Part shown: positions 12,712 to 59,999 of the stretch, piece after piece
Position numbering within the stretch: position 1 is the first letter of the stretch
Layout of the letters: the number at the start of each line of letters is the position of its first letter
Source: Oopsacas minuta
Lineage: Eukaryota; Animalia; Porifera
Assembly (NCBI GenBank): GCA_024704765.1
Contig: JAKMXF010000122.1
Location: 761,489-825,488 of the forward strand
Direction: 5' to 3'
DNA: 64,000 bases
Made by a program: the position numbers and the translations under genes
Notes under the pieces: model-generated
Database searches by the model: none
What the model was told of the DNA's origin: nothing
The model's input: only the letters and a program-made list of their open reading frames with translations

Positions 12712-13139
12712 TATATAGTAGGCTATACTTCACACTCAAAATAAATCCATGTTTAACGATAGCATATTTGAAGAAATTTTCAATTTATAATTTTATACCA
12801 TGAACATGAAAATAAAATGTTTATCAAAAGTCTGAATTGAGAAAAATGCTCGCGAGGACATCTGGTGGTAGGGAAATTTGTTCACGGAAGCCTCCATGCA
12901 GGTATAAACACTAATTCAGGGTAGATTTCCGCTCTAACCAACGCAGGAGTTCCTCAAAATGACCTGGAACAACATCAGAGCAGGTATGGCCATTAATCCA
13001 GGGTAAATCCCCATCAATACAACCTAGTCAGTAGTGCTTCAAATGACCTGGAACGACGACTTTTCTCGTGGAAATACTTTCGCGAGCATTGATCCGCAAC
13101 CATCTTTTCGTCAACGCTTTTCTCAGTCCTAATTTGAGT

Positions 13140-14334
13140 AAGAGATAATATATAGAGAGCTCAGCTCTCGTGCTAATCAAACACAATGGTCAACAACTAC
13201 TGAATGCGATCACGGGAAAGACACAAAAGGCGAAGCTTACAGTAAACATCTCACCATCAACACAGCTAACATGAACTCATCAACACTCAAGTACTCCGAA
13301 AGACCAAGCATCCTACACTCCCAAATTAAAGTCTTCGTGTAGTAGCAAGTCTTGGCCAGATATCCCAGCAACTACCAGACACCCTTCAATAGCCAGGATA
13401 AAAAGGAAAGTTAATGGCGGAACCGACTACAAAAGATGGACCAAAACTACATAATACACGACAAAACAACAATACACAACTTCTACGAAAAACAAAAACC
13501 ACAAAACCTGTAGAACTGACAAAAAACAAACCCTCGGACAAAATACGACGATAATTAATCCGAATAAAAACTCCTATAGCCATAAAGTAGCGAACTAAAT
13601 CCCTAATCCCCTCCCAATGGTACCCGTTTCTAACTAATAAAATAATAAGTGCTATCTCGTCCTCGTTTCTATACATCCATTTTTCTATAATTATCTCCTT
13701 AATTTCTATCAATAAATTCTTTTAAACGAAATCCCTTAAGCCCTATTTTGTAACATAAGATCATAACACGGACATACTTTATACTTTACACTTTTCTACA
13801 AACATAAACAAACAATAACATTCATACAAACATACAATCACTCTTTAAACAATAACTGGTTCACGAATAACACATACTTGACTGCCAATAATTCCTCACA
13901 AATCACTTCATAACATTACTATCGATATCCGAAGCACCTCTTTTAACCTTCAACACCTAGAGAACAGATCACCTCCAATAACAACAAGAAGAATCACTCA
14001 TCAAAACTATCGCAAGTAAATCACCTTCATTGTTCGAATCAGCTGCTTCACAACCCTACAATAAACATACTATATAAAAAGATATATTACAACAGCAATC
14101 TGCAACAAGCAAACTATACAAGGATATATTACAGCAGCAAATCCATACAGAAATATACATTACAGAAACATCAGCCATCCTACAATACTATCCACAATAC
14201 AGATCTACAATACACGCATAATGCATACACACACATAACACTGTAAAGACACAGCAAAGGCTCAGTAATGACACAACTAGGTACCAACTCATAACTTAAA
14301 TCTACTACCCAGAACAGCTGAAAAGGCTATAAAT
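13140..14334. other. Strongly G-poor, C/A-rich island; possibly a decayed LINE or a G-to-A hypermutated insert
   Basis: Hand count gives about 38 G in 540 nt at 13441-13980, about 15 of them in CpG. There is no long ORF, only faint APE-like (HLTINTANMNS) and RT-like (YRNIS) echoes. Confidence 0.45.
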
Positions 14335-14744
14335 CAGGGGTTCCCAACCTGTGGTACGCGTACTCCAGGGGGTACGCGAGAAGGTTGAGTCATTTACGAA
14401 TATTATTTTCAAATTTGTAATTATGACACCATGTAATTTGAAATTAATCTAAATGTATAATTTGACAGAAGATTTGCAATATTAATAGTAATATTCCGTA
14501 GAATATGAACTTAGGTGTAATGATTTAATTACTTTTCTATTACACACAATAGAGTATTAATTTTTGTCAAGTAATAGACCTTTGAAATAACAAATGAATT
14601 CATATAACTTTACCAAAGAAGCCTAATTAGTATATTCTCAGTCAATATATAATGCTAATGAAAGTTGGAATTTACAATGAGGGGTACGCGGTGAATATCC
14701 TTTTTGCATAGTAGGACATGGGCTACAAAAGGTTGGGAACCCTG
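14335..14744. mobile_element. hAT (Charlie-like) MITE, 410 bp
   Basis: TIRs CAGGGGTTCCCAACCT / AGGTTGGGAACCCTG with a perfect 8-bp TSD CTATAAAT (14327-14334 and 14745-14752). Confidence 0.92.
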
Positions 14745-14869
14745 CTATAAATAGTAGAAATTCTTGTAAATTTGCACTTCTGTTTTTATTCTCTCTGTGA
14801 CATTAAAAGTTATTATGCCTCAGATATTTAGAAATTCGGCTAATTTTATTTTTTGTAGTCATGATGACG

Positions 14870-15196
14870 TAATAATCCCATGATGAGTTAGATTTTGGTC
14901 AGGACTTTTGTCACATTGAGGGATACCTGTGATTCTAATTTCAAACTTCTATAATATATATTGGCTGAGCAGTGGTTAATAATGTGATATTTCGAAAATC
15001 CAAAAAGGTGACAATTACGTCATAATTTCGTCATAGGTGTGAACTTTCGTCCAAGACTCAAACTTGTCCGAGCCAGGCCCCAAAATACCCTTGTATGCCA
15101 AAAATCAGCCCCAGGAGTCTTCCAGTTTCTTCAATCAATTCTTAACACACAAACATATACTTACATAAAGATTAATTGCGTTTTAATAGTATAGAT
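14870..15196. repeat. Dispersed repeat abutting the RBMX2 start codon
   Basis: The body matches about 46290-46600. The terminal GATTAATTGCGTTT..AGTATAGATGAA matches 43146-43182. Confidence 0.75.
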
Positions 15197-50285: not shown

Positions 50286-53200
50286 CAGAAGTGGCTGAAG
50301 GCGCAAAGGTCCTAGAATTAAAGTTAGATGATAGTCAGATAAAGGATGTATCTACTTCCCAACTACTCTTGAAGTATGTTATATTTCTTAGTAATATAAA
50401 TTTAAAATACATTATGAGGGATTACATATTCTCGATTGTATAATCTTGTTTATGATCTAATATCGGTCGAGAAACATAGTGTACAGTCAACTAGCATTAT
50501 ATCAAAGCTCAAGTGATAATTACTTCAACATAACGGAGTTCTATATAACTTATTATATTTATGTTACTTTGACGGTTTATGACAATATTTATACAATTTC
50601 ATACTTCGTATAATCAATTATTTCGCTATATCTGTGTGGATATAACGGGAGTTGACTGTAAGAACCTTTACCTGATATGAATACAATTTATTTATCTAGT
50701 CAGCTGATAGAACTAAAGTCACTCTTAAACAACCCATCTCCCACTTCAGAATCTCTTGTCAGAGCTGAAAAATTCGCTCAATCTTGTCTAGACTCCGCCC
50801 GCTTAGAAGAACCTCCGCTAGTCCTGACTTTAAAGATTTCCCTATACTCTCTATTATAAATACAATAGATACGTACAGAAGAGATGGGAAGGAATTTACC
50901 GCATTCTTACGCTTCCTCAATAATGTATTATCAATCTACATAAAGGATTCTGAATTTATTTTAGCTCCGTCTCTTACTGATAAACTAGTTCAACTTGCTA
51001 ACAGTTTGTATGCTGATAACACCAAGGATGAGACCACAATTACTCTATACTTACTGGTAAGCACTACAGTCATAGTGAATTGGTACACTTAATTTACCGA
51101 TTCCTACAAAAATTTCGACATTTTTTCCACTTTTTTTGTATCTTCAAATATTTTCATAAATTTTCCTGCAGTAAAGGGTTAATATTTGTGTGATACAAGT
51201 GTGAACAAACAACAACATACGAACATGCAACCTATCAGTAAAACTGACTATTACATTGATAAAGCTATCAATAAAGAACATTATAAATATTGTGAGGATA
51301 TATTTTTCAATATATTTCTCCACTTTAGAGCTGTGTATACTTCATAAGAGAGCCTAACACAAAATCACAATCACAAGAAGCTGTAGCTTCTACAACACTC
51401 ACAACCTGTACAGAACTATACTTCTCATACTCAGAGCATACTACACACAACCTATCTCTAATTCTCTCTGTTCTCAGTGAGTTTGTAATACATCTACCTA
51501 CTCTATTCACTAATCACGGAGGATTTGATTATTCACCGTTACTACTACCAATTCTTGAAGACAATACCAATCATAAGTCTGTTTGCTTAGCAACCATGAC
51601 GCTGCTTAAGAATGCATTCATATTTAACCCAAATATAAAGCAGGACACAAACTTTACTTCTCTACCAAACCACATTTCTACACTACTACAACTTTACCCG
51701 CGTGACCTAGAACTGATGAAAGAAGTGTTTGTATTATTAACTAATTTCATAACAGAGCAGAGGGGGCTTATTCCGCAATTAGCTGATACAAATCATCCTA
51801 TACTATCCTTCTGTATAACTACACTACAGGATGATACCTGTTTTATAGACATGCATTTTAGTGTTTGTCCTATATTGGGTTTGATCGTATTTTCATTGAA
51901 AATAGAGGACAAAACCTTAATAGCACGGTTACTATTGAAAAATCTGATTCGTGCAAGGAAAGAGAAGATCGAATTACCTGACAATGTATTCGCGGCTACT
52001 GCAGGAGTAACATTCAGTTATTCAGTTGATAAATTATCAAAAGACCCTAAAGATGATCTAGCCTCCCCTCCCTCTTCCCTAACATACTCAGAATTCCAAG
52101 ACCTCCTGGGTATAACAATGGCAAGCACTGATGGACAAGTAGTGCTACTGCAGTCAATAGGGATGTTAAGTAACTTAGCACAACGTAATCGTAACATGCG
52201 TTTCTCTACTGAGCTATTGAAAGGATTGAGAAATGCATTTATTGTTTTCCATAGAACCGGGGATAAAGACACTGTTCAGTTTATTCTGAGGCTAATATAC
52301 GGTATAGATAAATCTGATAGAAGTCAAGCAGAAGCTATGGTCGATTCTGAGATAGCTAGTGGGATTACTGAGGTAAGAGTTTATTATAGGGATGCTTATT
52401 TATTGATCGAATAGAACCCGCATAGAACTTTAAAAATAATTCTTCTAATCCAAAGTATTTTTGGTACATTTAAGTGTACCCATGTGATGGGATTATGAGA
52501 ATAGAATTACAGTCAATTCCCGTTATATCGAACACTGACATATCTAATACACCCTTATGTAGAAGTCTTGGATTGTACAAGTATAGTTCTGTATCGTCAA
52601 AAATAGCATTAATTTCATTGGTCGCGGTTGTATTGCATCCGTTTATATGGAAGTTATTATCACAGTCCCTTGACCTTTGATATAACGGAAGTTGACTGTA
52701 TTTAATCGCAAAAGACTTATACCTTATTTGTGTACATACGAAAGCAATTATCCTTTATGTACAGTCAGGGTTTTTTATTGTGAACAACAGTCCACTGTCC
52801 TGTCCATTCACTTGTGCTAAAAATGACTTTACTTGTATATTAATTACCGTGCAGTATATGATATGATGAGGTTAAGTTTTCAAAGGATAATTTAGAATAT
52901 ACATTAATGACAAGAAATTCTTAATAGAAACATATGTTGAAGATTTACATAAAAAGGCCAATAAAATAGGAGAAAAATTAACAAATGACTTAAACAAAAT
53001 ATCCAAAAATTTCATTAATCTTAAAGAAAATAATGCTAACCTTCAGAAGGAGAAAGATACTTTTGAGGAAATATTTAAAGAAAACGGTTTTAGCGGATTA
53101 GTTAAGGAAAAGTTTGATAGAGTAAATATCCAAATGGAAGAGATTGGAAGGGAAATAGATCATGAAATGAATTGTGATATAACATTAAAATGGGATCAGC

Positions 53201-56200
53201 GAATGATGGATCAATTGGATTGTATCTGTACAATTGATAAACCTATTTTCATAAGAAACAAATATCAATTTCTTCTCCAATTCCTAAACCAAGAGTATCC
53301 ATTTATAAGCGACTAACTAGATCAGAGGTTTCATCTTGTAATCACGGATCTGGTAATGGTATGTTAAACTCTCCTTCAGGAATAACAACAAACTCTTCAT
53401 TTCTATACATTTGTGATGCAAATAATGATAGAATTCAAATATCCGACTACACAGCCTCTTTCATATACAAAATACAACATCCTAAACTCTCTCATCCTAT
53501 TTCTATCTGTGTTGACGCTAATAACATATTTTTAACTCAATGTCAGCCTGATAGAGTAATTAAATTCTCTGTAACAGGTAGCTACACCAAACACTACAGT
53601 CATATAGATCATCCAACTGGAATATGTATTCATGCTGAGAAATTGTACGTATGCTCATATGGATACAAAAATATTATTGTCCTGTACTATGATTTGAATC
53701 CTGCATCAAACAATAGCATTCTATGCGAAGGAGAGCTTACAAGCCCTAGAGATGTTAAAGTGACTGACAATGAAGAATTAATTGTATTAGACTGGGGAGA
53801 ATCAACGTTCCTATTTTTACCATATATGGGCATTTATTGAGGAAATGGTCTGGAGACTCAATTCTAAATATTCGTTTTCCAGGATATTTTGACATTGATA
53901 ATCGTAATAATTTTATTCTATTAACAGATGCTAACAGGATATTTATATTTAATTACGAAGGCTGTTGTCTGCATACAATTGGAAATAGACAAACACTCGG
54001 TAGACTCACTGGGATTACTCTCGTGCAAAAAGATAGTAATATCACTATAATAGTCGTGAATCAATGTGATAGTAATCAACTACAAATATGGCATTAATTT
54101 CCCCTACATAGTTTCTGTACTTTTGGCTATATTCCCTATTGAGATATTTATATTTGTATATTGTGATATCTACCCGTTTGATAATTAATGAATATACTAA
54201 CTCATGTACATATTCAGTATCTTGAATATTTGTCTCTTCTGGTTCTCCGATTCTGTATTTGTATCGGAGTTATTATATCTATTTATATCGATATGCGTAT
54301 AATGTGAGAATTTTAACCATTATTCACAGCGTTTGAGCTCGGATGTCAAAAATTATCCATAATTATCCATAATTATCCATTCTTTTCTTAATTCTCTCTT
54401 TGATTGTATTAAGATTTATTAAAATCTTGTAGTGCCTTTCCCAAGAAGCAGACCTCCAGACAGTAATGATGTTTTTGGCGATTATTAACGGAATAATGAT
54501 CTGCTATCAACAACAATTCAAGGATATTAAACAATTAAATGATCCAACCTTCCACAATACATTTATAACTCTCTTCTTTAGACCTGTAAGCTTATACTAG
54601 ATTTGTAATATAGCTTGCATGTTATGTCATTATGTATGTGTGTATTATTACCATAGACAACTGACGAAACAAAGGAATCTCTTCATGAAGTTCTATCATT
54701 CTGTTTCATAAATTTATCATGTGATAAGTTATCTTCTATTTCAATGTATGAACATGGAGTAATCCCTAAAATGCTGGAATTCATTTCCACACCAGAGCAC
54801 TATACAAAGACCAGTCTCCGGGCAGCGATTAGCTCTCTGGCTAATATTGGAATAGATAGCACTAAGGCTAAGAAGGCCATGTTTGGTGAGTACATAGTAG
54901 AGACAATTATTATACAAGCAAAGGTAGCATGTATACGAAAATGCAGTCTATAAACATAAGCAATTGGTTTATTAATCATACATATGTTTGTACGTATTAG
55001 TATTGCAATATTTGCTTATCTCTTATGTAGCTACTTTATTCAGGTCAATTACATATATTCTGCATGTAACACTAAGATATTTACATATCTATAATGCAAA
55101 AGTATTTTCTATTCATGACTCTGGTTTGCGAATTTCGTATAAATAGAAGATAATTTGTAAATTATAAATACAAATTTCTTAAAGTTTTTAATCAATTAAA
55201 CTACACATCACTCTACTACTGTTTTATCTGCATGAGGCTATTATTCGAATTAGAATGGAGAGTTCTCTACTGTACTCTCACCACAGGTCTATCGTCTTTC
55301 GTGTTGGGATATTCGTTCGGTTTACCCTCCCCAATAGCTCTTGAGGTTAAGTCAAGTAATATATTAGATGATTATCAATTCGGTATTTTCTCTGGCATAT
55401 TCTATCTTGCAGCAGCAATCAGTGGTCTCATAGCTATACCCATGATGTATTGGCTTGGCAGGAAGTCAGTGATAGTAATAGCAGCAATTATATCAGCTGC
55501 TGGTTGGATTCTTCTCGGGAGTAGAGATTACCAGAATTACTGATCTATGCTAGAGTAGTTATTGGGTTAGGAAGTGGACTCTCTATTCCTATCGTACCTA
55601 TCTATATAGCTGAGCTAGCTAACAAGAACACACGAGGGAGACATCTCAGTATCATAGGATTTGACATAACGTTTGGAGTCCTAGTATCGTTCGTTTTGGA
55701 ATTAAACTCGACTACTTTTGGTTATCAATGATAGGAGCCCTTATATGCATCGTACAGACAATATTGTTACTGTTTGTCCCTTACTCACCTGATTATTTAG
55801 TTGACCTAGGTTTAGAGAAGAGAGTTCTCTCTACATTGAAGAAGTTACGTTGTAAGAATTATGACTCAATGAGTGGGGTGCTTGAGATAATGGAAGCTGT
55901 TAAGGATCAGGAAATGGATCTCAATTCTAAAATACAAACTTTATTTAAGCTGAATAACATCAAAGCACTTATAATAATAATGTTCACAGCCATTGCCTGT
56001 CAAATGTCTGGTATTAATCTCCTCTTTAGTTATGCCTCGGAACTTCTCACTAACGATCATATAGACGCTAATCTAATAGGAATAGTTTATCCACTGACTC
56101 TGATTTTCGGCAACGTTTTGAACACATTCTTAATAGACAAAATAGGTAGGAACATGCTGTTGTTAATATCATACATAGGTATAACGATATCACTTGTAGT

Positions 56201-57541
56201 TTTGTCAATATACTTGCTTATTATCGACGTGATTTGTCCTGTTGCCCTAGAGAACATACATTTGCAATATACTATTACTGGCGTATGTTTGAGTTCATAT
56301 CTTATAGCATGGCCTATTGTCTGCATTACGTTTTTCAGCCTCGTTTTGGTTTAGAAGTCGGTAGTGTATGTTATATAATGCTTGGAGAACTCATACCGCT
56401 AAATATTAGACATTTAGTTTCGGGTATAGGAATATTCATGCTATTCATGACATCTTTCGTATTAGTAACGTTATACCCTATCGTTAGTAACAGTATCCCT
56501 AGATGTTATTTCCTATTCGGAGTGAGTATACTGTTTATGATAGTGTGCGTGATTACTTTTGTGTTTACTCCTGAGACAAAAGGAAAATCTGTTGCAGAGT
56601 TAGAGAATCTTTTCAATGGAAAAATCATCTTCATTATTGATAATGTGTAGTTTTACTATTTTGTATTGTAATTTTCTTAAATACACTTTTACTATGTAAA
56701 TATTGTACAGTTGATAATAGGAATATTAAAGGTACACTTTTTAAACGGTGTCATGTATTTTATAATAAATCTATTTTTGAGCAAGAAATTTGCTGTGAGT
56801 ATGGACGATGTATGACCCTATTTACGTCCATGCGATCCTTCCGAAACTAGCAGTTATTGACATGATAATTGGAATATATTACCATTTTTGTACATTAATG
56901 TTCGCCTAGACCCTTAATATATCTAGAGTTAATATTTAGACAAGTTTGTTGGTGAGAAATTATATTTATTCTTGGTTATAAATTGATTGAAAATATTGAA
57001 AATATCATTGATCACACTAAAGTGTGGAAATAAAGCATTTTTTTTACTCCAAAAACATATCTACACTGAGGGTTTCTCAGACATTTAATCCACAGATATT
57101 AGTATAAGGGTGTATAAATTTAGATAGATCCTGACCGTGTTTCTTCCTTTTAGAATCTGGGATGCACTTAAAGCTATCAGACATGATTAAAACAATTTCA
57201 ACAGATACGGACCCCGACTGGTCGTTATATTGTACAGCTCTTAGAGGTGTTCAAATACTCGCTTCAGGCGATTATGCAAAACAAGCTATGTTAAAAACTG
57301 ATCTAAAGAAAGATGTAGTGAGTATTCTACGTAGAGATCCCAGTGTTACTGAGGTTGTCTGGAGGAGTTTCACGTTTTTGGCTGGTCTGAGTTACGTGGC
57401 TGTTCCTGACAGAGAACAATTCTTTACAAAACAATTGTTTGAATTGATTTCTTCACAAATGAGAAAGATGAAACATGGAAAAATATTCGGTTGCGGTTGT
57501 TCCTTCTTTATCTCTATGTCTGAGCATGATTTGGGTGTAAG
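50286..57541 (+). CDS. ARM/HEAT-like helical-repeat region (exons 1-6 of the predicted ARM-ATE fusion gene; true 5' end not found)
   Basis: Exons are 50286-50373, 50700-51056 (one T missing at 50829-50831), 51329-52372, 54433-54585, 54657-54885 and 57154-57541. All introns are GT-AG with matching phases (2,0,0,0,1). ARM-like helices include LLQSIGMLSNLA, LRAAISSLANIG and ALRGVQILA..VVWRSFTFLAGL. Confidence 0.75.
52890..54097 (+). CDS. Coiled-coil + NHL-repeat protein nested in intron 52373-54432 (two 1-nt deletions)
   Basis: Frame 1 is open from about 52891. Adding one T at 53246-53249 and one at 53814-53818 yields HGSGNGMLNSPSGI..LYICDANNDRIQI..PISICVD..PTGICI..PRDVKV..PGYFDID. The start codon is uncertain. 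Confidence 0.75.
55232..56650 (+). CDS. MFS sugar porter (GLUT8/SLC2A8 / TRET1-like), intronless, 473 aa, nested in intron 54886-57153 (three 1-nt deletions)
   Basis: Motifs WLGRK, ARVVIGLGSG...PIYIAELANKNTRG, PYSPDYL, CQMSGINLLFSYA, DKIGRN, GELIPLNIR and FVFTPETKGKSVAELE. Adding one base at each of 55528-29 (T), 55698-99 (G) and 56344-47 (T) gives 1422 nt in frame. Confidence 0.88.
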
Positions 57542-58551
57542 GTAGGTGTCAATTAATCATATTCCTGGGTTTATTTTTTGAATGGCCAAAGAACATAACA
57601 AAGGAAAATTCATCGTTACTAACCATCTACCACTGTATATGCAGCTGGACCTGGCTTTAAAATTCAATTATTTATATGTGTGTAATTTGCAGGTTTAATT
57701 CATTGTTTGTGAACATATCTAGTTTATTGTCTTTCTACGACAAATGATCAAACTACTGTTAGTAACCTCAAAATACTTTTTTAAATAGTTTCCGTAATAT
57801 ACATATACATTTCCTCTGTTTATGATATCTTTACTCTTCTCCATATTTAAGTTTAAGATTATTCACTTTTTGAGGCTGGTACATGTTCTTTGTGTTGTTC
57901 TTTATACATAGCATTCTATGTATATTCCATTATAATAATAATAATATACACAATTGCTCTAACCAATTGACGTTATAATCATCATGTCTGCCAGCTGGCA
58001 AACGCTGCTAATATTGCCTAATTATGTCATTTGATAATTGTAGCGGTTCATTATGGTCCTCCCAAAATTGATTTGAGGGTGCCCCCAAAATGAACCACTA
58101 CAATAATTATGCATCATCATATATATACGTGTGTGATAATTTGTGCTACCCGAATGTATTATAAGTTTAATGTGTCTTGCATTGGATGCAAAAATTGATC
58201 CCCTATAAATATAGAATCGTTCTGGGTACCAATTTCTGCAAATTCACAATCAATGCAGAGTATATCGGTGTATTATACACCCCTTTAACATGCATAGTTT
58301 ATACATAACTTCAAAAGAATCATCCACTCTTCAGTCAAACAATAAATTTGCTTTCATAATCCGTTTTTCGTTTATAAGGATTTTCTAACTGGCAACCTAG
58401 ATTCTACATACAAATCTCCCAGCAACCCATCCTTTACGTTACTTAATAGGTTCCTGGAAAATTTGTATGCAGCAACCTAGGTTATTGAGTAGAACAACCC
58501 AATTATGCTCACATCCGTGGACATATTATAAAAGTGCTTATATTACTTTAG

Positions 58552-59999
58552 ATACACTGGAGACTTTGGATTGGATAAAGTTATATTTGAAGCTATGAAC
58601 AAACCTTCACTAACAGATGAAATGGGTGATTTGAAGAGAAGGTGCTTGGGTTGTTTAGACAAGTTTGTTTGTCACGTTATTCCCCGTCCATTACCTCAAC
58701 CAGTCACAAATCCTATTCTCCCTAACAACATCGATAATTTCATAGTGCATAGACATTTCGGTGTTACTCGTCACTTCTGTTCAAATTGTGAGCAAGATGC
58801 TCCTAGATCTGAGGTGGTTATGCGACCAGACGCAGTGACACTTAAGCAATATCAGCAGCTGGTTAACAACGGGTGGTACCGAAGGGGAGGCCGTAAGATG
58901 TTCCGGTTCAATTCACAACACAAAAAAGTTTGCTTTGATTGGGAGACGAGAGTACGAGTTAAGGAATTTGATATCAATAGTTCTAAAACATTTAAGAGAG
59001 TACTGAAGAAGGTGCCTAATGATGTTGTCATTGAGACTGTACCAGCAAGGTAATAAAAATTGAGTGTTATATAGGCAATTTTCCACACTTAGCCACCTGA
59101 TCACTGAATATGTATCAGCAATAAATTACGTCTCATGTTCAGAAAATTTTTATTTATTCTTGAATCCCTCAGATTAACACAGGAGGGAGTAGATCTCTAC
59201 AATAGATACCATCTCGATAAACATGACAAACCAGCTAAAACAGCTAATGCATACGCAGAGCATGCAGTACTATCTCCTCTCAAACCAGAAACACGTAATG
59301 GCATTAACTACGGTACTTTTTCATCAAGAATACAGACTAAATGGCAAACTAATCGCAATACGAGTTATTGACGTCATTCTTGAAGGAGTAGTTAGTGTAT
59401 ATTTCTTTTATGACATGTCTAAGGAAGTTACAAAGATGTCTTTAGGAGTTTATTCATCTCTTAAAGAGATTGAGTATATAATAAGTTTGAATAAGATTAA
59501 TCCCTTTTGTAAGTATTACTATTTACAAGGCTGGAATGGTCCAAATCATAAGTTAGCTTATAAGGCGAATTACAAACCTATTGAATTCTGTTCTCCTTGC
59601 CACAGTCCCTATTGGACAGAAAATATCAACATTCCATACATCCAAACTGGTTTCCAACCTCCGTTAGCTGAGGGTAGAATACCTCCCGAATTAACTAGCG
59701 TGCCTTCATCTCGCCCCGAACTTCTGCCTGATAGTGAGAATAACTATAAATCAATTGACATCGACCGAGCATACATGAGTGAAGTACATAAGATTATAAT
59801 AAAGGGTTCTAACATACGAGTATTTCTCAATGGAGAGATAATGAGATGTGAGGAATTGCTTGATAAATATAAGATATATTCAGAAACAAAACACTATATA
59901 TATGAGACTCTTGAAGAGTTAGCACTAGCACTAGGATACCCACTTTGTAATAAGTTGTTAGTTGCCTTCAGATTTTCAGAACAGATTACAGACACGTGA
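58552..59999 (+). CDS. ATE1: Arginyl-tRNA-protein transferase (ATE1-like, ATE_N + ATE_C); exons 7-8 of the predicted ARM-ATE fusion gene
   Basis: Exons 58552-59049 and 59173-59999 have phase-2 junctions, with one extra T at 59317-59321. ATE_N reads CSNC...YQQLVNNGWYRRGG; ATE_C reads YGTFHQEYRLNGKLIAIRVIDV..VSVYFFYD..SLGVYSSLKEI..YYYLQG..KLAYKANYKP. Orthology to canonical ATE1 is not established. Confidence 0.85.

What the first reader, a model, noticed from the sequence alone, without database searches (positions are those of the whole stretch)
50286..59999. Predicted ARM/HEAT-repeat + ATE1-like arginyltransferase fusion protein (about 1,190 aa)
Seen: eight exons that look unrelated in the ORF track splice through canonical GT-AG introns with every phase matching (2,0,0,0,1,2,2). 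After two homopolymer fixes the CDS length is integral. Exon 58552-59049 starts at an acceptor with no ATG in front, continues the helical region (DLKRRCLGCLDKF), then a Pro-rich linker (IPRPLPQPVTNPILP), then ATE_N. Known: canonical eukaryotic ATE1 (Arg/N-degron pathway) is a stand-alone ATE_N+ATE_C enzyme of about 500 aa, and the bacterial Bpt homologs are shorter. Inference: about 800 aa of ARM-like scaffold could act as a built-in substrate or adaptor module, giving a targeted N-terminal aminoacylation system. I do not know this architecture from characterised proteins, but unstudied invertebrate homologs may exist.
Basis: partly seen in the sequence, partly recalled or inferred. Interest (0 to 1): 0.85.

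Follow-up and report, generated by a model that had tools for sequence, protein, structure and literature searches.

The report
Sponge arginyltransferase fused to ARM solenoid
This sponge gene really does join a long armadillo-repeat scaffold to an ATE1-type enzyme that adds arginine to protein ends, and it belongs to a large family of such fusions that sits unnamed and unstudied in public sequence data.

Summary
The eight-exon model is right. All seven introns are GT-AG with phases 2,0,0,0,1,2,2, and the product is about 1,190 aa. The join between the helical part and the ATE part (57541/58552) is well supported. The donor, the acceptor and a split Arg codon are kept in five related loci from four other assemblies. 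That intron is only about 116 nt in two of them, and exon 7 has no conserved Met. The nearest relatives of the ATE domain are proteins of 1,000-1,460 aa, many encoded as single uninterrupted ORFs, and the spliced window protein aligns to their profile end to end (590 bits). The only named member I found is Sycon ciliatum XP_065175038.1, "uncharacterized protein". The family forms its own clade apart from canonical ATE1. It keeps the Arg-pocket Glu, the Tyr-Lys pair and the RR motif. It replaces the CGYC Tyr with Asn and lacks one metal Cys. Exon 3 folds as an armadillo solenoid. The window copy has three single-base lesions, one of which destroys the start ATG; they look more like assembly errors than decay. 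What the scaffold does is inference. The scan's notes list a similar first-reader finding on another piece of this genome.

The parts
50291..50373 (+). Exon 1, the first coding exon. The start codon position is disrupted: the window has AAGTGG where relatives have AATGG. Donor GTATGT, phase 2.
   Evidence: tblastx to L010 1791-1874 (MADTPKVLALKLD...). DNA comparison. Lineage-B first exons start with ATG GC..
50700..51056 (+). Exon 2 (helical). Carries a 1-nt deficit at 50812-50819.
   Evidence: Conserved as one open frame in L001, L003, L004 and L005, with no Met before it. Gap in the window shown.
51329..52372 (+). Exon 3, 348 aa, armadillo-type solenoid.
   Evidence: 39-58% identity to five loci. 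AF2 pLDDT 86.7, all helical. VIA Z 18.0 to p120 catenin and 17.2 to plakophilin ARM domains.
54433..54585 (+). Exon 4 (helical), phase 0 at both ends.
   Evidence: Conserved in L001-L005. Matches family profile positions 455-502.
54657..54885 (+). Exon 5 (helical). Donor GTGAGT, phase 1.
   Evidence: Family profile positions 509-588, E 8e-8. Hits residues 410-577 of P0007 and P0010.
57154..57541 (+). Exon 6 (helical), the last ARM repeats. Donor AG|GTAGGT, phase 2.
   Evidence: Family profile positions 577-703, E 2e-15. Donor position and phase conserved in six loci.
58552..59049 (+). Exon 7: end of the solenoid, a Pro-rich linker, and ATE_N with CSNC and GWYRRGG.
   Evidence: Pfam ATE_N 25.2 bits. 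Acceptor and split Arg codon conserved, no conserved Met. Profile positions 713-758 and 819-924.
59173..59999 (+). Exon 8: ATE_C (GNAT core), C-terminal domain and TGA stop. Carries an extra T in the T5 run at 59316-59320.
   Evidence: Pfam ATE_C 69.1 bits. The other five loci have one base fewer at this site and an open frame. PDB ATE1 sequence hits.
52891..54094 (+). Coiled-coil + NHL-repeat gene nested in intron 3. Not part of the ARM-ATE protein. One frame break in the window.
   Evidence: Pfam NHL. Intact 416-425 aa ORFs at the same place in L002 and L003. Absent from L004 and L005.
55232..56650 (+). MFS sugar-transporter gene nested in intron 5. Not part of the ARM-ATE protein. Three single-base frame breaks in the window.
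   Evidence: Pfam Sugar_tr. Intact 469-480 aa ORFs in L001-L003. Break sites listed.

Best explanation
Window 50.29-60.0 kb (+ strand) holds one eight-exon gene for a protein of about 1,190 aa. Roughly 750 N-terminal residues form an armadillo-type alpha-solenoid. A short Pro-rich linker follows, then a complete ATE1-type aminoacyl-tRNA-protein transferase module (ATE_N, GNAT-fold ATE_C and a C-terminal domain).

The gene belongs to a large, unnamed paralog family, here called ARM-ATE, that branches apart from canonical stand-alone ATE1. Members occur in several copies per genome, sometimes adjacent. The only named member I found is from the calcareous sponge Sycon ciliatum. Earlier notes of this scan assign the window to the glass sponge Oopsacas minuta; I did not verify that.

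Shown here: the architecture, the splice structure, the clade, and the conserved and changed residues.

Inferred: the enzyme is probably active as a tRNA-dependent transferase, because the residues that hold the Arg moiety and catalyse transfer are kept. The solenoid most likely recruits particular protein partners, so that aminoacylation is aimed at chosen targets. The fast-evolving first ~470 residues would set target choice, and the conserved last third would pack next to the enzyme. The acceptor pocket is remodelled, so acceptor specificity may differ from the Asp/Glu N-termini used by ATE1.

The window copy carries three single-base lesions that are more likely consensus errors of the assembly than real decay.
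For: Splicing:
- GT-AG introns with matching phases, and a 1,193-aa read-through with X at the two breaks.
- The E6 donor AG|GT, the E7 acceptor and the split Arg codon sit at the same position in the window and in L001-L005. Intron 6 is about 116 nt or less in L002 and L003.
- Protein conservation in exon 7 starts at the acceptor (RYTG...), and no Met is conserved there.
- Paralog lineage B (L004, L005) has the same exon order without the nested genes.

Fusion elsewhere:
- A phmmer search with the ATE_C piece against 1.84 billion representatives puts many 1,000-1,330 aa proteins with a C-terminal ATE at the top.
- At least 148 clusters of 653 aa or more were found; the 120 listed run 670-1,460 aa, and many carry faint ARM_ARMC5 hits.
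- Single uninterrupted ORFs occur in L006 (1,252 aa), L008, L009 and L012.
- Named member: Sycon XP_065175038.1, 1,310 aa.

Collinearity:
- The window model against a profile of 20 long members scores 590 bits. Model residues 172-805 align to profile positions 125-758, and 814-1190 to 819-1204. The E6/E7 junction lies inside an aligned block.
- A profile built only from N-terminal parts hits model residues 471-752 at E 3e-39. Shuffled controls give nothing.

Clade: 39 rows with 100 SH-aLRT support, separate from 56 canonical ATE1-like proteins.

Fold:
- AF2 model of P0010 has pLDDT 86; residues 1-736 are all helical and the ATE module spans 808-1187. Foldseek to human ATE1 8tzv gives E 4e-13 and TMt 0.74; the N-terminal part matches ARM/HEAT proteins.
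- The window exon 3 model has pLDDT 86.7 and VIA Z 17-18 to p120 catenin and plakophilin.

Residues: kept are E1017 (klAte1 E277), Y1048-K1049 (Y303-K304), R863-R864 (R80 region) and the CxxC cysteines (PMC9351520).

Constraint: the window lineage has 12 unique changes where the other five loci agree, against 10-37 for the others.
Against: - I found no transcript of this species, so the junction rests on comparison, not on RNA.
- The window copy lacks an intact ATG and has two frame breaks.
- Pfam ARM models are only hit below threshold.
- The first ~470 residues match no family outside glass-sponge loci.
- The Tyr of CGYC is Asn in this clade; its Y25F mutant nearly abolished klAte1 activity on Nt-Glu. 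One of the four metal-binding Cys is missing (PMC9351520, PMC10115844). Canonical activity is therefore not assured.
- The taxon range is unknown, because nearly all members come from unnamed assemblies.
- The N-terminal part of the Sycon protein itself is not detected by the main-group N-terminal profile.
Confidence: 0.85

Rival explanations
1. There are two adjacent genes. A helical protein ends at the TAG at 57543-57545, and a separate ATE1-like gene starts at the ATG at 58595 or 58622.
For: Reading E6 through its donor gives a stop at once, and exon 7 contains in-frame ATGs. Intron 6 is 1,010 nt in the window, which leaves room for a promoter.
Against: Neither ATG is conserved: P0004 and P0005 have no Met there. 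The donor, acceptor and split Arg codon are conserved in six loci, and the intron is about 116 nt in L002 and L003. Intronless relatives encode both parts in one ORF, and the junction lies inside an aligned block.
Confidence: 0.04
2. The architecture is real, but this particular locus is a decaying copy. The ARM-ATE gene and both nested genes would be pseudogenes, with a working copy elsewhere in the genome.
For: About 10 kb holds seven single-base indels: three in ARM-ATE, including the loss of the ATG, one in NHL and three in MFS. All are intact in related loci. Earlier notes place another ARM-ATE locus with a sugar-transporter ORF on another piece of this genome (s1-304953, s1-205386), and report a 62-kb open frame elsewhere in the assembly (s1-290525).
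Against: All lesions are single-base indels, and three of the five whose context I examined sit in T runs. There are no nonsense substitutions and no larger deletions. The window lineage shows no excess of amino-acid change: 12 unique changes against 10-37 in the other loci. That is the pattern expected of long-read consensus errors in a duplicated region that polishes poorly.
Confidence: 0.25
3. The ATE module is no longer an arginyltransferase. It would be either a pseudo-enzyme that only binds tRNA or protein N-termini, or a transferase with a different acceptor or donor.
For: Positions that are invariant in canonical ATE1 are changed across the whole clade: CGYC to CSNC, CC to xC, YTIR to ETRV, and GYYIHxCPKM to QGWNxxNxKL. 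The Y25F mutant of klAte1 nearly abolishes activity on Nt-Glu (PMC9351520).
Against: The Arg-pocket Glu, the Tyr-Lys pair, H969, D985 and the RR pair are invariant or nearly so across the clade. That argues for retained catalysis. The changed positions are themselves strongly conserved, which indicates function rather than decay.
Confidence: 0.3

Closest known systems
Canonical eukaryotic ATE1 (arginyl-tRNA-protein transferase; human 8tzv, S. cerevisiae 7tif/8e3s, K. lactis 7wfx)
   Same: It has ATE_N and a GNAT-fold ATE_C, and the homolog P0010 matches the fold at TMt 0.74. Kept residues are the Arg-pocket Glu, the catalytic Tyr-Lys, the RR pair, the CxxC cysteines and a C-terminal domain.
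   Different: It has about 750 extra N-terminal residues of ARM solenoid and forms a separate clade. It lacks the long insert between ATE_N and ATE_C. The CGYC Tyr is Asn, the first Cys of the CC pair is lost, and several other positions invariant in canonical ATE1 are swapped. The family is multi-copy, whereas ATE1 is usually a single gene.
Sycon ciliatum XP_065175038.1 (uncharacterized protein LOC135804982, 1,310 aa; EukProt EP00117_P007911)
   Same: A long helical N-terminus plus C-terminal ATE_N/ATE_C, placed in the same clade in the ATE tree.
   Different: It sits in a different sub-branch and lacks the DWETR and QGWN signature motifs. Its N-terminal part is not detected by the main-group N-terminal profile.
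ARM-domain substrate receptors joined to, or working with, protein-modifying enzymes (plant U-box PUB-ARM ligases, ARMC5-CUL3, ZYG11B/ZER1 N-degron receptors)
   Same: The logic is the same: an ARM solenoid attached to, or recruiting, a protein-modifying catalytic module. There are faint Pfam hits to ARM_ARMC5, ARM_PUB and ZER1-like_2nd and weak Foldseek rows to ZYG11B/ZER1.
   Different: All sequence hits are far below the family thresholds, and the structural similarity is generic to ARM repeats. The attached enzyme here is a tRNA-dependent transferase, not a ubiquitin ligase. This is a resemblance in design, not membership.
Bacterial Bpt / Aat leucyl/phenylalanyl-tRNA-protein transferases
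   Same: Same superfamily of aminoacyl-tRNA-protein transferases with a GNAT-like fold.
   Different: They are short, stand-alone bacterial enzymes. The window protein is clearly on the eukaryotic ATE side.

Membership tests
ATE1 / arginyl-tRNA-protein transferase (Pfam ATE_N + ATE_C) | ATE_C (GNAT core) domain above the Pfam gathering score | tested here: met
   69.1 bits against a cut-off of 25 on window 59223-59999. PDB ATE1 sequence hits down to E 8e-13.
ATE1 / arginyl-tRNA-protein transferase (Pfam ATE_N + ATE_C) | ATE_N domain above the Pfam gathering score | tested here: inconclusive
   25.2 bits against a cut-off of 27. The region aligns at 155 bits to the ARM-ATE profile. The homolog's whole ATE module superposes on human ATE1 at TMt 0.74.
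ATE1 / arginyl-tRNA-protein transferase (Pfam ATE_N + ATE_C) | Strictly conserved CX2C...CC metal-binding motif (scATE1 C20, C23, C94, C95; PMC10115844) | tested here: not met
   C829-S-N-C832 is present, but the CC pair reads V879-C880. The first Cys is absent across the clade.
ATE1 / arginyl-tRNA-protein transferase (Pfam ATE_N + ATE_C) | Arg-pocket acidic residue and catalytic Tyr-Lys (klAte1 E277, Y303, K304; PMC9351520) | tested here: met
   E1017 and Y1048-K1049 of the window model. These are 95-100% conserved in both clades.
ATE1 / arginyl-tRNA-protein transferase (Pfam ATE_N + ATE_C) | Basic residue that recognises the acidic N-terminus (klAte1 R80 in the GFRRSG motif) | tested here: met
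   The window has GWYRRGG with R863-R864, assigned by motif alignment. One Tyr is inserted before the RR pair.
ATE1 / arginyl-tRNA-protein transferase (Pfam ATE_N + ATE_C) | Tyr of the CGYC motif at the acceptor pocket (klAte1 Y25) | tested here: not met
   Asn831 in the window. The position is Asn in 92% of the ARM-ATE clade and Tyr in 91% of canonical proteins.
ATE1 / arginyl-tRNA-protein transferase (Pfam ATE_N + ATE_C) | Placement inside the canonical ATE1 clade | tested here: not met
   The ARM-ATE proteins form a 39-row clade with 100 SH-aLRT support and branch length 0.76, apart from 56 canonical-type rows. It is a paralog subfamily.
ATE1 / arginyl-tRNA-protein transferase (Pfam ATE_N + ATE_C) | [quoted passage not shown] | not testable with these tools
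   Needs a biochemical assay.
Armadillo (ARM) repeat proteins | A Pfam ARM-family model above its gathering score | tested here: not met
   ARM_ARMC5 scores 11 bits in window exon 6 and 16-32 bits in the seven of eight homologs where it was reported, against a cut-off of 79.9.
Armadillo (ARM) repeat proteins | Right-handed superhelix of three-helix repeats (fold) | tested here: met
   The window exon 3 model (pLDDT 86.7) gives VIA Z 18.0 with 317 aligned residues to p120 catenin, Z 17.2 to plakophilin 1 and Z 18.4 to a chain of the bovine sperm axonemal doublet-microtubule structure. Helical background is about 13-14. P0010 residues 1-736 contain about 48 helices and match ARM/HEAT proteins.
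ARM-ATE fusion family (unnamed; defined here) | Full-length collinear match to the profile of long members, and placement in their clade | tested here: met
   590 bits, with model residues 172-1190 matching profile positions 125-1204. An N-terminal-only profile gives E 3e-39. The window model lies inside the clade.

The most novel reading that the evidence does not exclude
ARM-ATE proteins are a diversified set of target-specific aminoacyl-tRNA-protein transferases. Each paralog's fast-evolving solenoid would pick its own protein targets, and the remodelled acceptor pocket (Asn for Tyr, altered metal site) would give an acceptor or donor specificity unlike ATE1. Sponges would then run a programmable system for tagging protein termini, for regulated degradation or defence, with no counterpart in model organisms.
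Probability: 0.25. Interest if true: 0.85.

Novelty: new variant of a known kind. Interest (0 to 1): 0.62.

Why it matters
ATE1 is treated as a single, stand-alone, highly conserved enzyme. How it chooses its substrates is an open question in the arginylation and N-degron field. Here is a large natural family in which an ATE1-type catalytic module is permanently tied to a 750-residue protein-binding solenoid. The family is multi-copy, and its acceptor pocket is altered in a conserved way. That points to a route by which tRNA-dependent aminoacylation can be aimed at chosen proteins. It also offers ready-made material for testing what sets acceptor specificity, namely the Tyr-to-Asn change and the loss of one metal Cys. 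Finally, it flags a sponge-rich gene family that current annotation leaves as "uncharacterized" or mislabels as plain ATE1.

Tried and rejected
- Two-gene reading (stop at 57543, start at 58595): rejected on splice-site conservation, the lack of a conserved Met and the single-ORF relatives.
- ATG at 50677 as the start codon: rejected. The four related loci examined have no Met there, and conservation begins at the acceptor.
E1 is the first coding exon, homologous to MAD.../MAN.../MAE... exons, with a broken ATG.
- Alternative E5 donor at 54924: rejected, because conservation ends at about residue 77.
- The search for homologous proteins with the whole-family alignment returned only two proteins because of the candidate cap, so it was uninformative.
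- Attempts to name the organisms behind ERZ25072740, ERZ25071281, ERZ20067936, ERZ25072730, GCA_029782515.1, SRR25758460 and SRR28167753 through the paper library and the scan's notes found nothing.
- Logan contigs L007 and L008 show no poly(A) tail, so they cannot be taken as transcripts.
- Literature searches for an ARM-ATE1 fusion or for sponge ATE1 found no description.
- Sequence look-ups in the scan's own notes were blank.
Full report
**What is in the sequence.**
The window is AT-rich eukaryotic DNA, 31-38% GC. Earlier notes of this scan assign the genome to the glass sponge Oopsacas minuta; I did not verify that.

On the + strand between 50.2 and 60.0 kb, the stop-to-stop frames and the raw sequence give eight exons:

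| Exon | Coordinates |
|---|---|
| E1 | 50291-50373 |
| E2 | 50700-51056 |
| E3 | 51329-52372 |
| E4 | 54433-54585 |
| E5 | 54657-54885 |
| E6 | 57154-57541 |
| E7 | 58552-59049 |
| E8 | 59173-59999 (TGA) |

- Every intron is GT...AG.
- With X at the two frame breaks, the product is 1,193 aa with one terminal stop.
- Pfam finds ATE_N in E7 (25.2 bits, cut-off 27) and ATE_C in E8 (69.1 bits, cut-off 25). It finds nothing significant in the helical exons.
- Intron 3 holds a coiled-coil + NHL gene and intron 5 holds an MFS sugar transporter, both on the same strand.

**Is the ARM-to-ATE join real?**
Sequence alone left this open. E6 read through its donor hits TAG at once, and E7 holds in-frame ATGs at 58595 and 58622. 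Comparison settles it.

- *Related loci.* A search with E7 found five relatives at 65-78% identity on long ENA contigs from four assemblies. All five loci carry the same ordered exons.
  - L001-L003 also keep the nested NHL and/or MFS genes, intact.
  - L004 and L005 are a second paralog lineage with different neighbours (DUF7587, NSRP1). They have no nested genes, yet show the same exon order within about 7 kb.
- *Splice sites.* In all six loci E6 ends ...G(V/A) AG|GT and E7 opens after an AG, with A or G completing an Arg codon followed by (Y/F)xG. Position and phase are identical.
- *Intron size.* The intron is at most about 116 nt in L002 and L003.
- *No independent start.* Protein conservation in E7 begins right at the acceptor, and no Met is conserved. 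P0004 and P0005 have none at either window ATG.

**The same architecture elsewhere.**
- A phmmer search with the ATE_C piece against 1.84 billion representatives ranked one glass-sponge ORF first. Next came many proteins of 1,000-1,330 aa whose ATE match lies at the C-terminal end.
- The window's E5 and E6 hit residues ~410-750 of those proteins, down to E 4e-14.
- A profile of 20 long members places the window exons in order: E4 at 455-502, E5 at 509-588, E6 at 577-703, E7 at 713-758 plus 819-924, and E8 at 928-1204.
- The spliced model scores 590 bits, with the E6/E7 junction inside a well-aligned block.
- A profile built only from N-terminal parts hits model residues 471-752 at E 3e-39. Shuffled controls score nothing.
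- Several members are single uninterrupted ORFs in eukaryotic contigs:
  - 1,252 aa in L006, beside HSP90, B-box and Tectonin genes;
  - 1,091 aa in L008;
  - 1,353 aa in L009;
  - two convergent genes of 1,215 and 1,212 aa in L012.
- A region-restricted search lists at least 148 clusters at 90% identity. The 120 rows shown run 670-1,460 aa. Many have precomputed ATE_C plus ARM_ARMC5 hits, and several share a contig.
- Only one cluster is named: Sycon ciliatum XP_065175038.1, "uncharacterized protein LOC135804982", 1,310 aa. EukProt labels it "Arginyl-tRNA--protein transferase 1". JGI auto-names a few others as arginyltransferase.

**A distinct paralog clade.**
- A tree of the ATE module has 95 rows. 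All ARM-bearing proteins, the window model and a few partial gene calls form one group of 39 (SH-aLRT 100, branch length 0.76). The other 56 rows are canonical-type proteins.
- Two ARM-less proteins (P0029, P0042) branch inside that group.
- Residues were compared column by column and read against the mutational and structural work on yeast ATE1 (PMC9351520, PMC10115844).
  - Kept: the CxxC cysteines, GW and the RR pair (R80 region), H969, D985, E1017 (klAte1 E277, the Arg pocket) and Y1048-K1049 (Y303-K304).
  - Changed, and conserved in the changed form:
    - the CGYC Tyr becomes Asn (klAte1 Y25; Y25F nearly abolished activity on Nt-Glu);
    - the first Cys of the metal-binding CC pair is lost;
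    - YTIR becomes ETRV;
    - FL..SPL becomes EH.VNSP;
    - GYYIHxCPKM becomes QGWNxxNxKL.
- So this is an ATE1-type enzyme, but it fails two defining features of canonical ATE1.

**The scaffold.**
- AF2 on P0010 with 16 family sequences gives pLDDT 86 and pTM 0.71. Residues 1-736 are entirely helical (about 48 helices), a linker follows, and the ATE module spans 808-1187.
- Foldseek matches the C-terminal part to human ATE1 (E 4e-13, TMt 0.74) and yeast ATE1. The N-terminal part matches designed ARM proteins, karyopherins, CAND1, UNC-45 and catenins.
- The window's own exon 3, folded with four glass-sponge homologs, gives pLDDT 86.7 and pTM 0.83.
- Its best VIA matches are ARM proteins: p120 catenin (Z 18.0, 317 residues aligned), plakophilin 1 (Z 17.2) and a chain of the bovine sperm axonemal doublet-microtubule structure (Z 18.4). 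That is above the helical background of about 13-14.
- Foldseek rows for exon 3 are weak, E of about 4e-3 or worse. They include the ZYG11B/ZER1 N-degron-binding ARM domains, which I treat as a lead only.
- Pfam ARM models are hit only far below threshold.
- The first ~470 residues (E1-E3) are conserved only among glass-sponge loci, at 39-58% identity. The ATE exons are 69-79% identical, so the N-terminal part evolves faster.

**State of the window copy.**
The gene has three single-base lesions:
- an extra G that destroys the start ATG (the window reads CAGAAGTGGCT, L010 reads CAGAATGGCT);
- a 1-nt deficit at 50812-50819;
- an extra T in the T5 run at 59316-59320.

The nested NHL gene has one frame break and the MFS gene has three, two of them in T runs. 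All of these are intact in related loci.

The window lineage shows no excess of amino-acid change. It has 23 unique changes in the four-way comparison, against 23 and 28 for L001 and L002. It has 12 where all five other loci agree, against 10-37 for the others. There are no nonsense substitutions.

I read this as consensus errors in a duplicated region that polishes poorly, at about 75%. A young pseudogene is not excluded.

**How it most likely works.**
- *Shown:* one polypeptide carries an ARM solenoid and a complete ATE1-type transferase module. The catalytic and Arg-binding residues are conserved, the acceptor pocket is remodelled, and the family is multi-copy.
- *Inferred:* the enzyme transfers an amino acid, most likely Arg, from aminoacyl-tRNA to proteins. 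The solenoid recruits particular partners, so the modification is aimed. The variable N-terminal two thirds set target choice. Acceptor specificity may differ from Asp/Glu N-termini.
- I put about 0.9 on the architecture, about 0.6 on retained catalysis and about 0.45 on the recruiting role.

**Novelty.**
Searches of the paper library found no description of an ARM-ATE1 fusion or of sponge ATE1 paralogs. The proteins exist in public data, but as "uncharacterized" or auto-named entries. I class this as a new variant of a known kind.

The scan's notes list a similar first-reader observation on another piece of the same genome (s1-304953). They also note the nested genes (s1-226884).

Noticed in passing
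window 52373-57153 (introns 3 and 5): A coiled-coil + NHL gene and an MFS sugar-transporter gene lie inside introns of the ARM-ATE gene on the same strand. The nesting is conserved with intact ORFs in L001-L003 and absent from paralog lineage B (L004, L005), so it arose after the paralogs split.
   Followed up: partly
window 50291; 50812-50819; about 53.77-53.84 kb (NHL, exact site not mapped); 55525; 55695; 56345; 59316-59320: Seven single-base indels hit three genes within about 10 kb, three of them in T runs, with no excess of amino-acid change. This suggests local consensus errors in a duplicated region rather than decay.
   Followed up: partly
L003:15049-16510: A second ARM-ATE copy (homologs of exons 2-3) starts about 2.8 kb downstream of the first gene's stop, so the genes are tandemly duplicated in that assembly.
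   Followed up: no
L012:10001-19040: Two convergent single-ORF ARM-ATE genes (1,215 and 1,212 aa) lie 1.8 kb apart. Several other contigs carry two or three members, so the family is locally amplified.
   Followed up: partly
P0029 (714 aa), P0042 (567 aa): These are ATE_N + ATE_C proteins without the solenoid, and they branch inside the ARM-ATE clade. They may be the stand-alone ancestor type, secondary losses or partial gene calls.
   Followed up: partly
L002:1-416 and 13118-14985; L004:1-148: MULE and hAT/zf-BED transposase ORFs flank the ARM-ATE loci in two assemblies.
   Followed up: no
window model residues 875-880 (exon 7, about 58.93 kb): A nearly invariant His (NH...C) sits four to five residues before the single remaining Cys of the former CC pair. 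It might serve as the fourth metal ligand in this clade.
   Followed up: no
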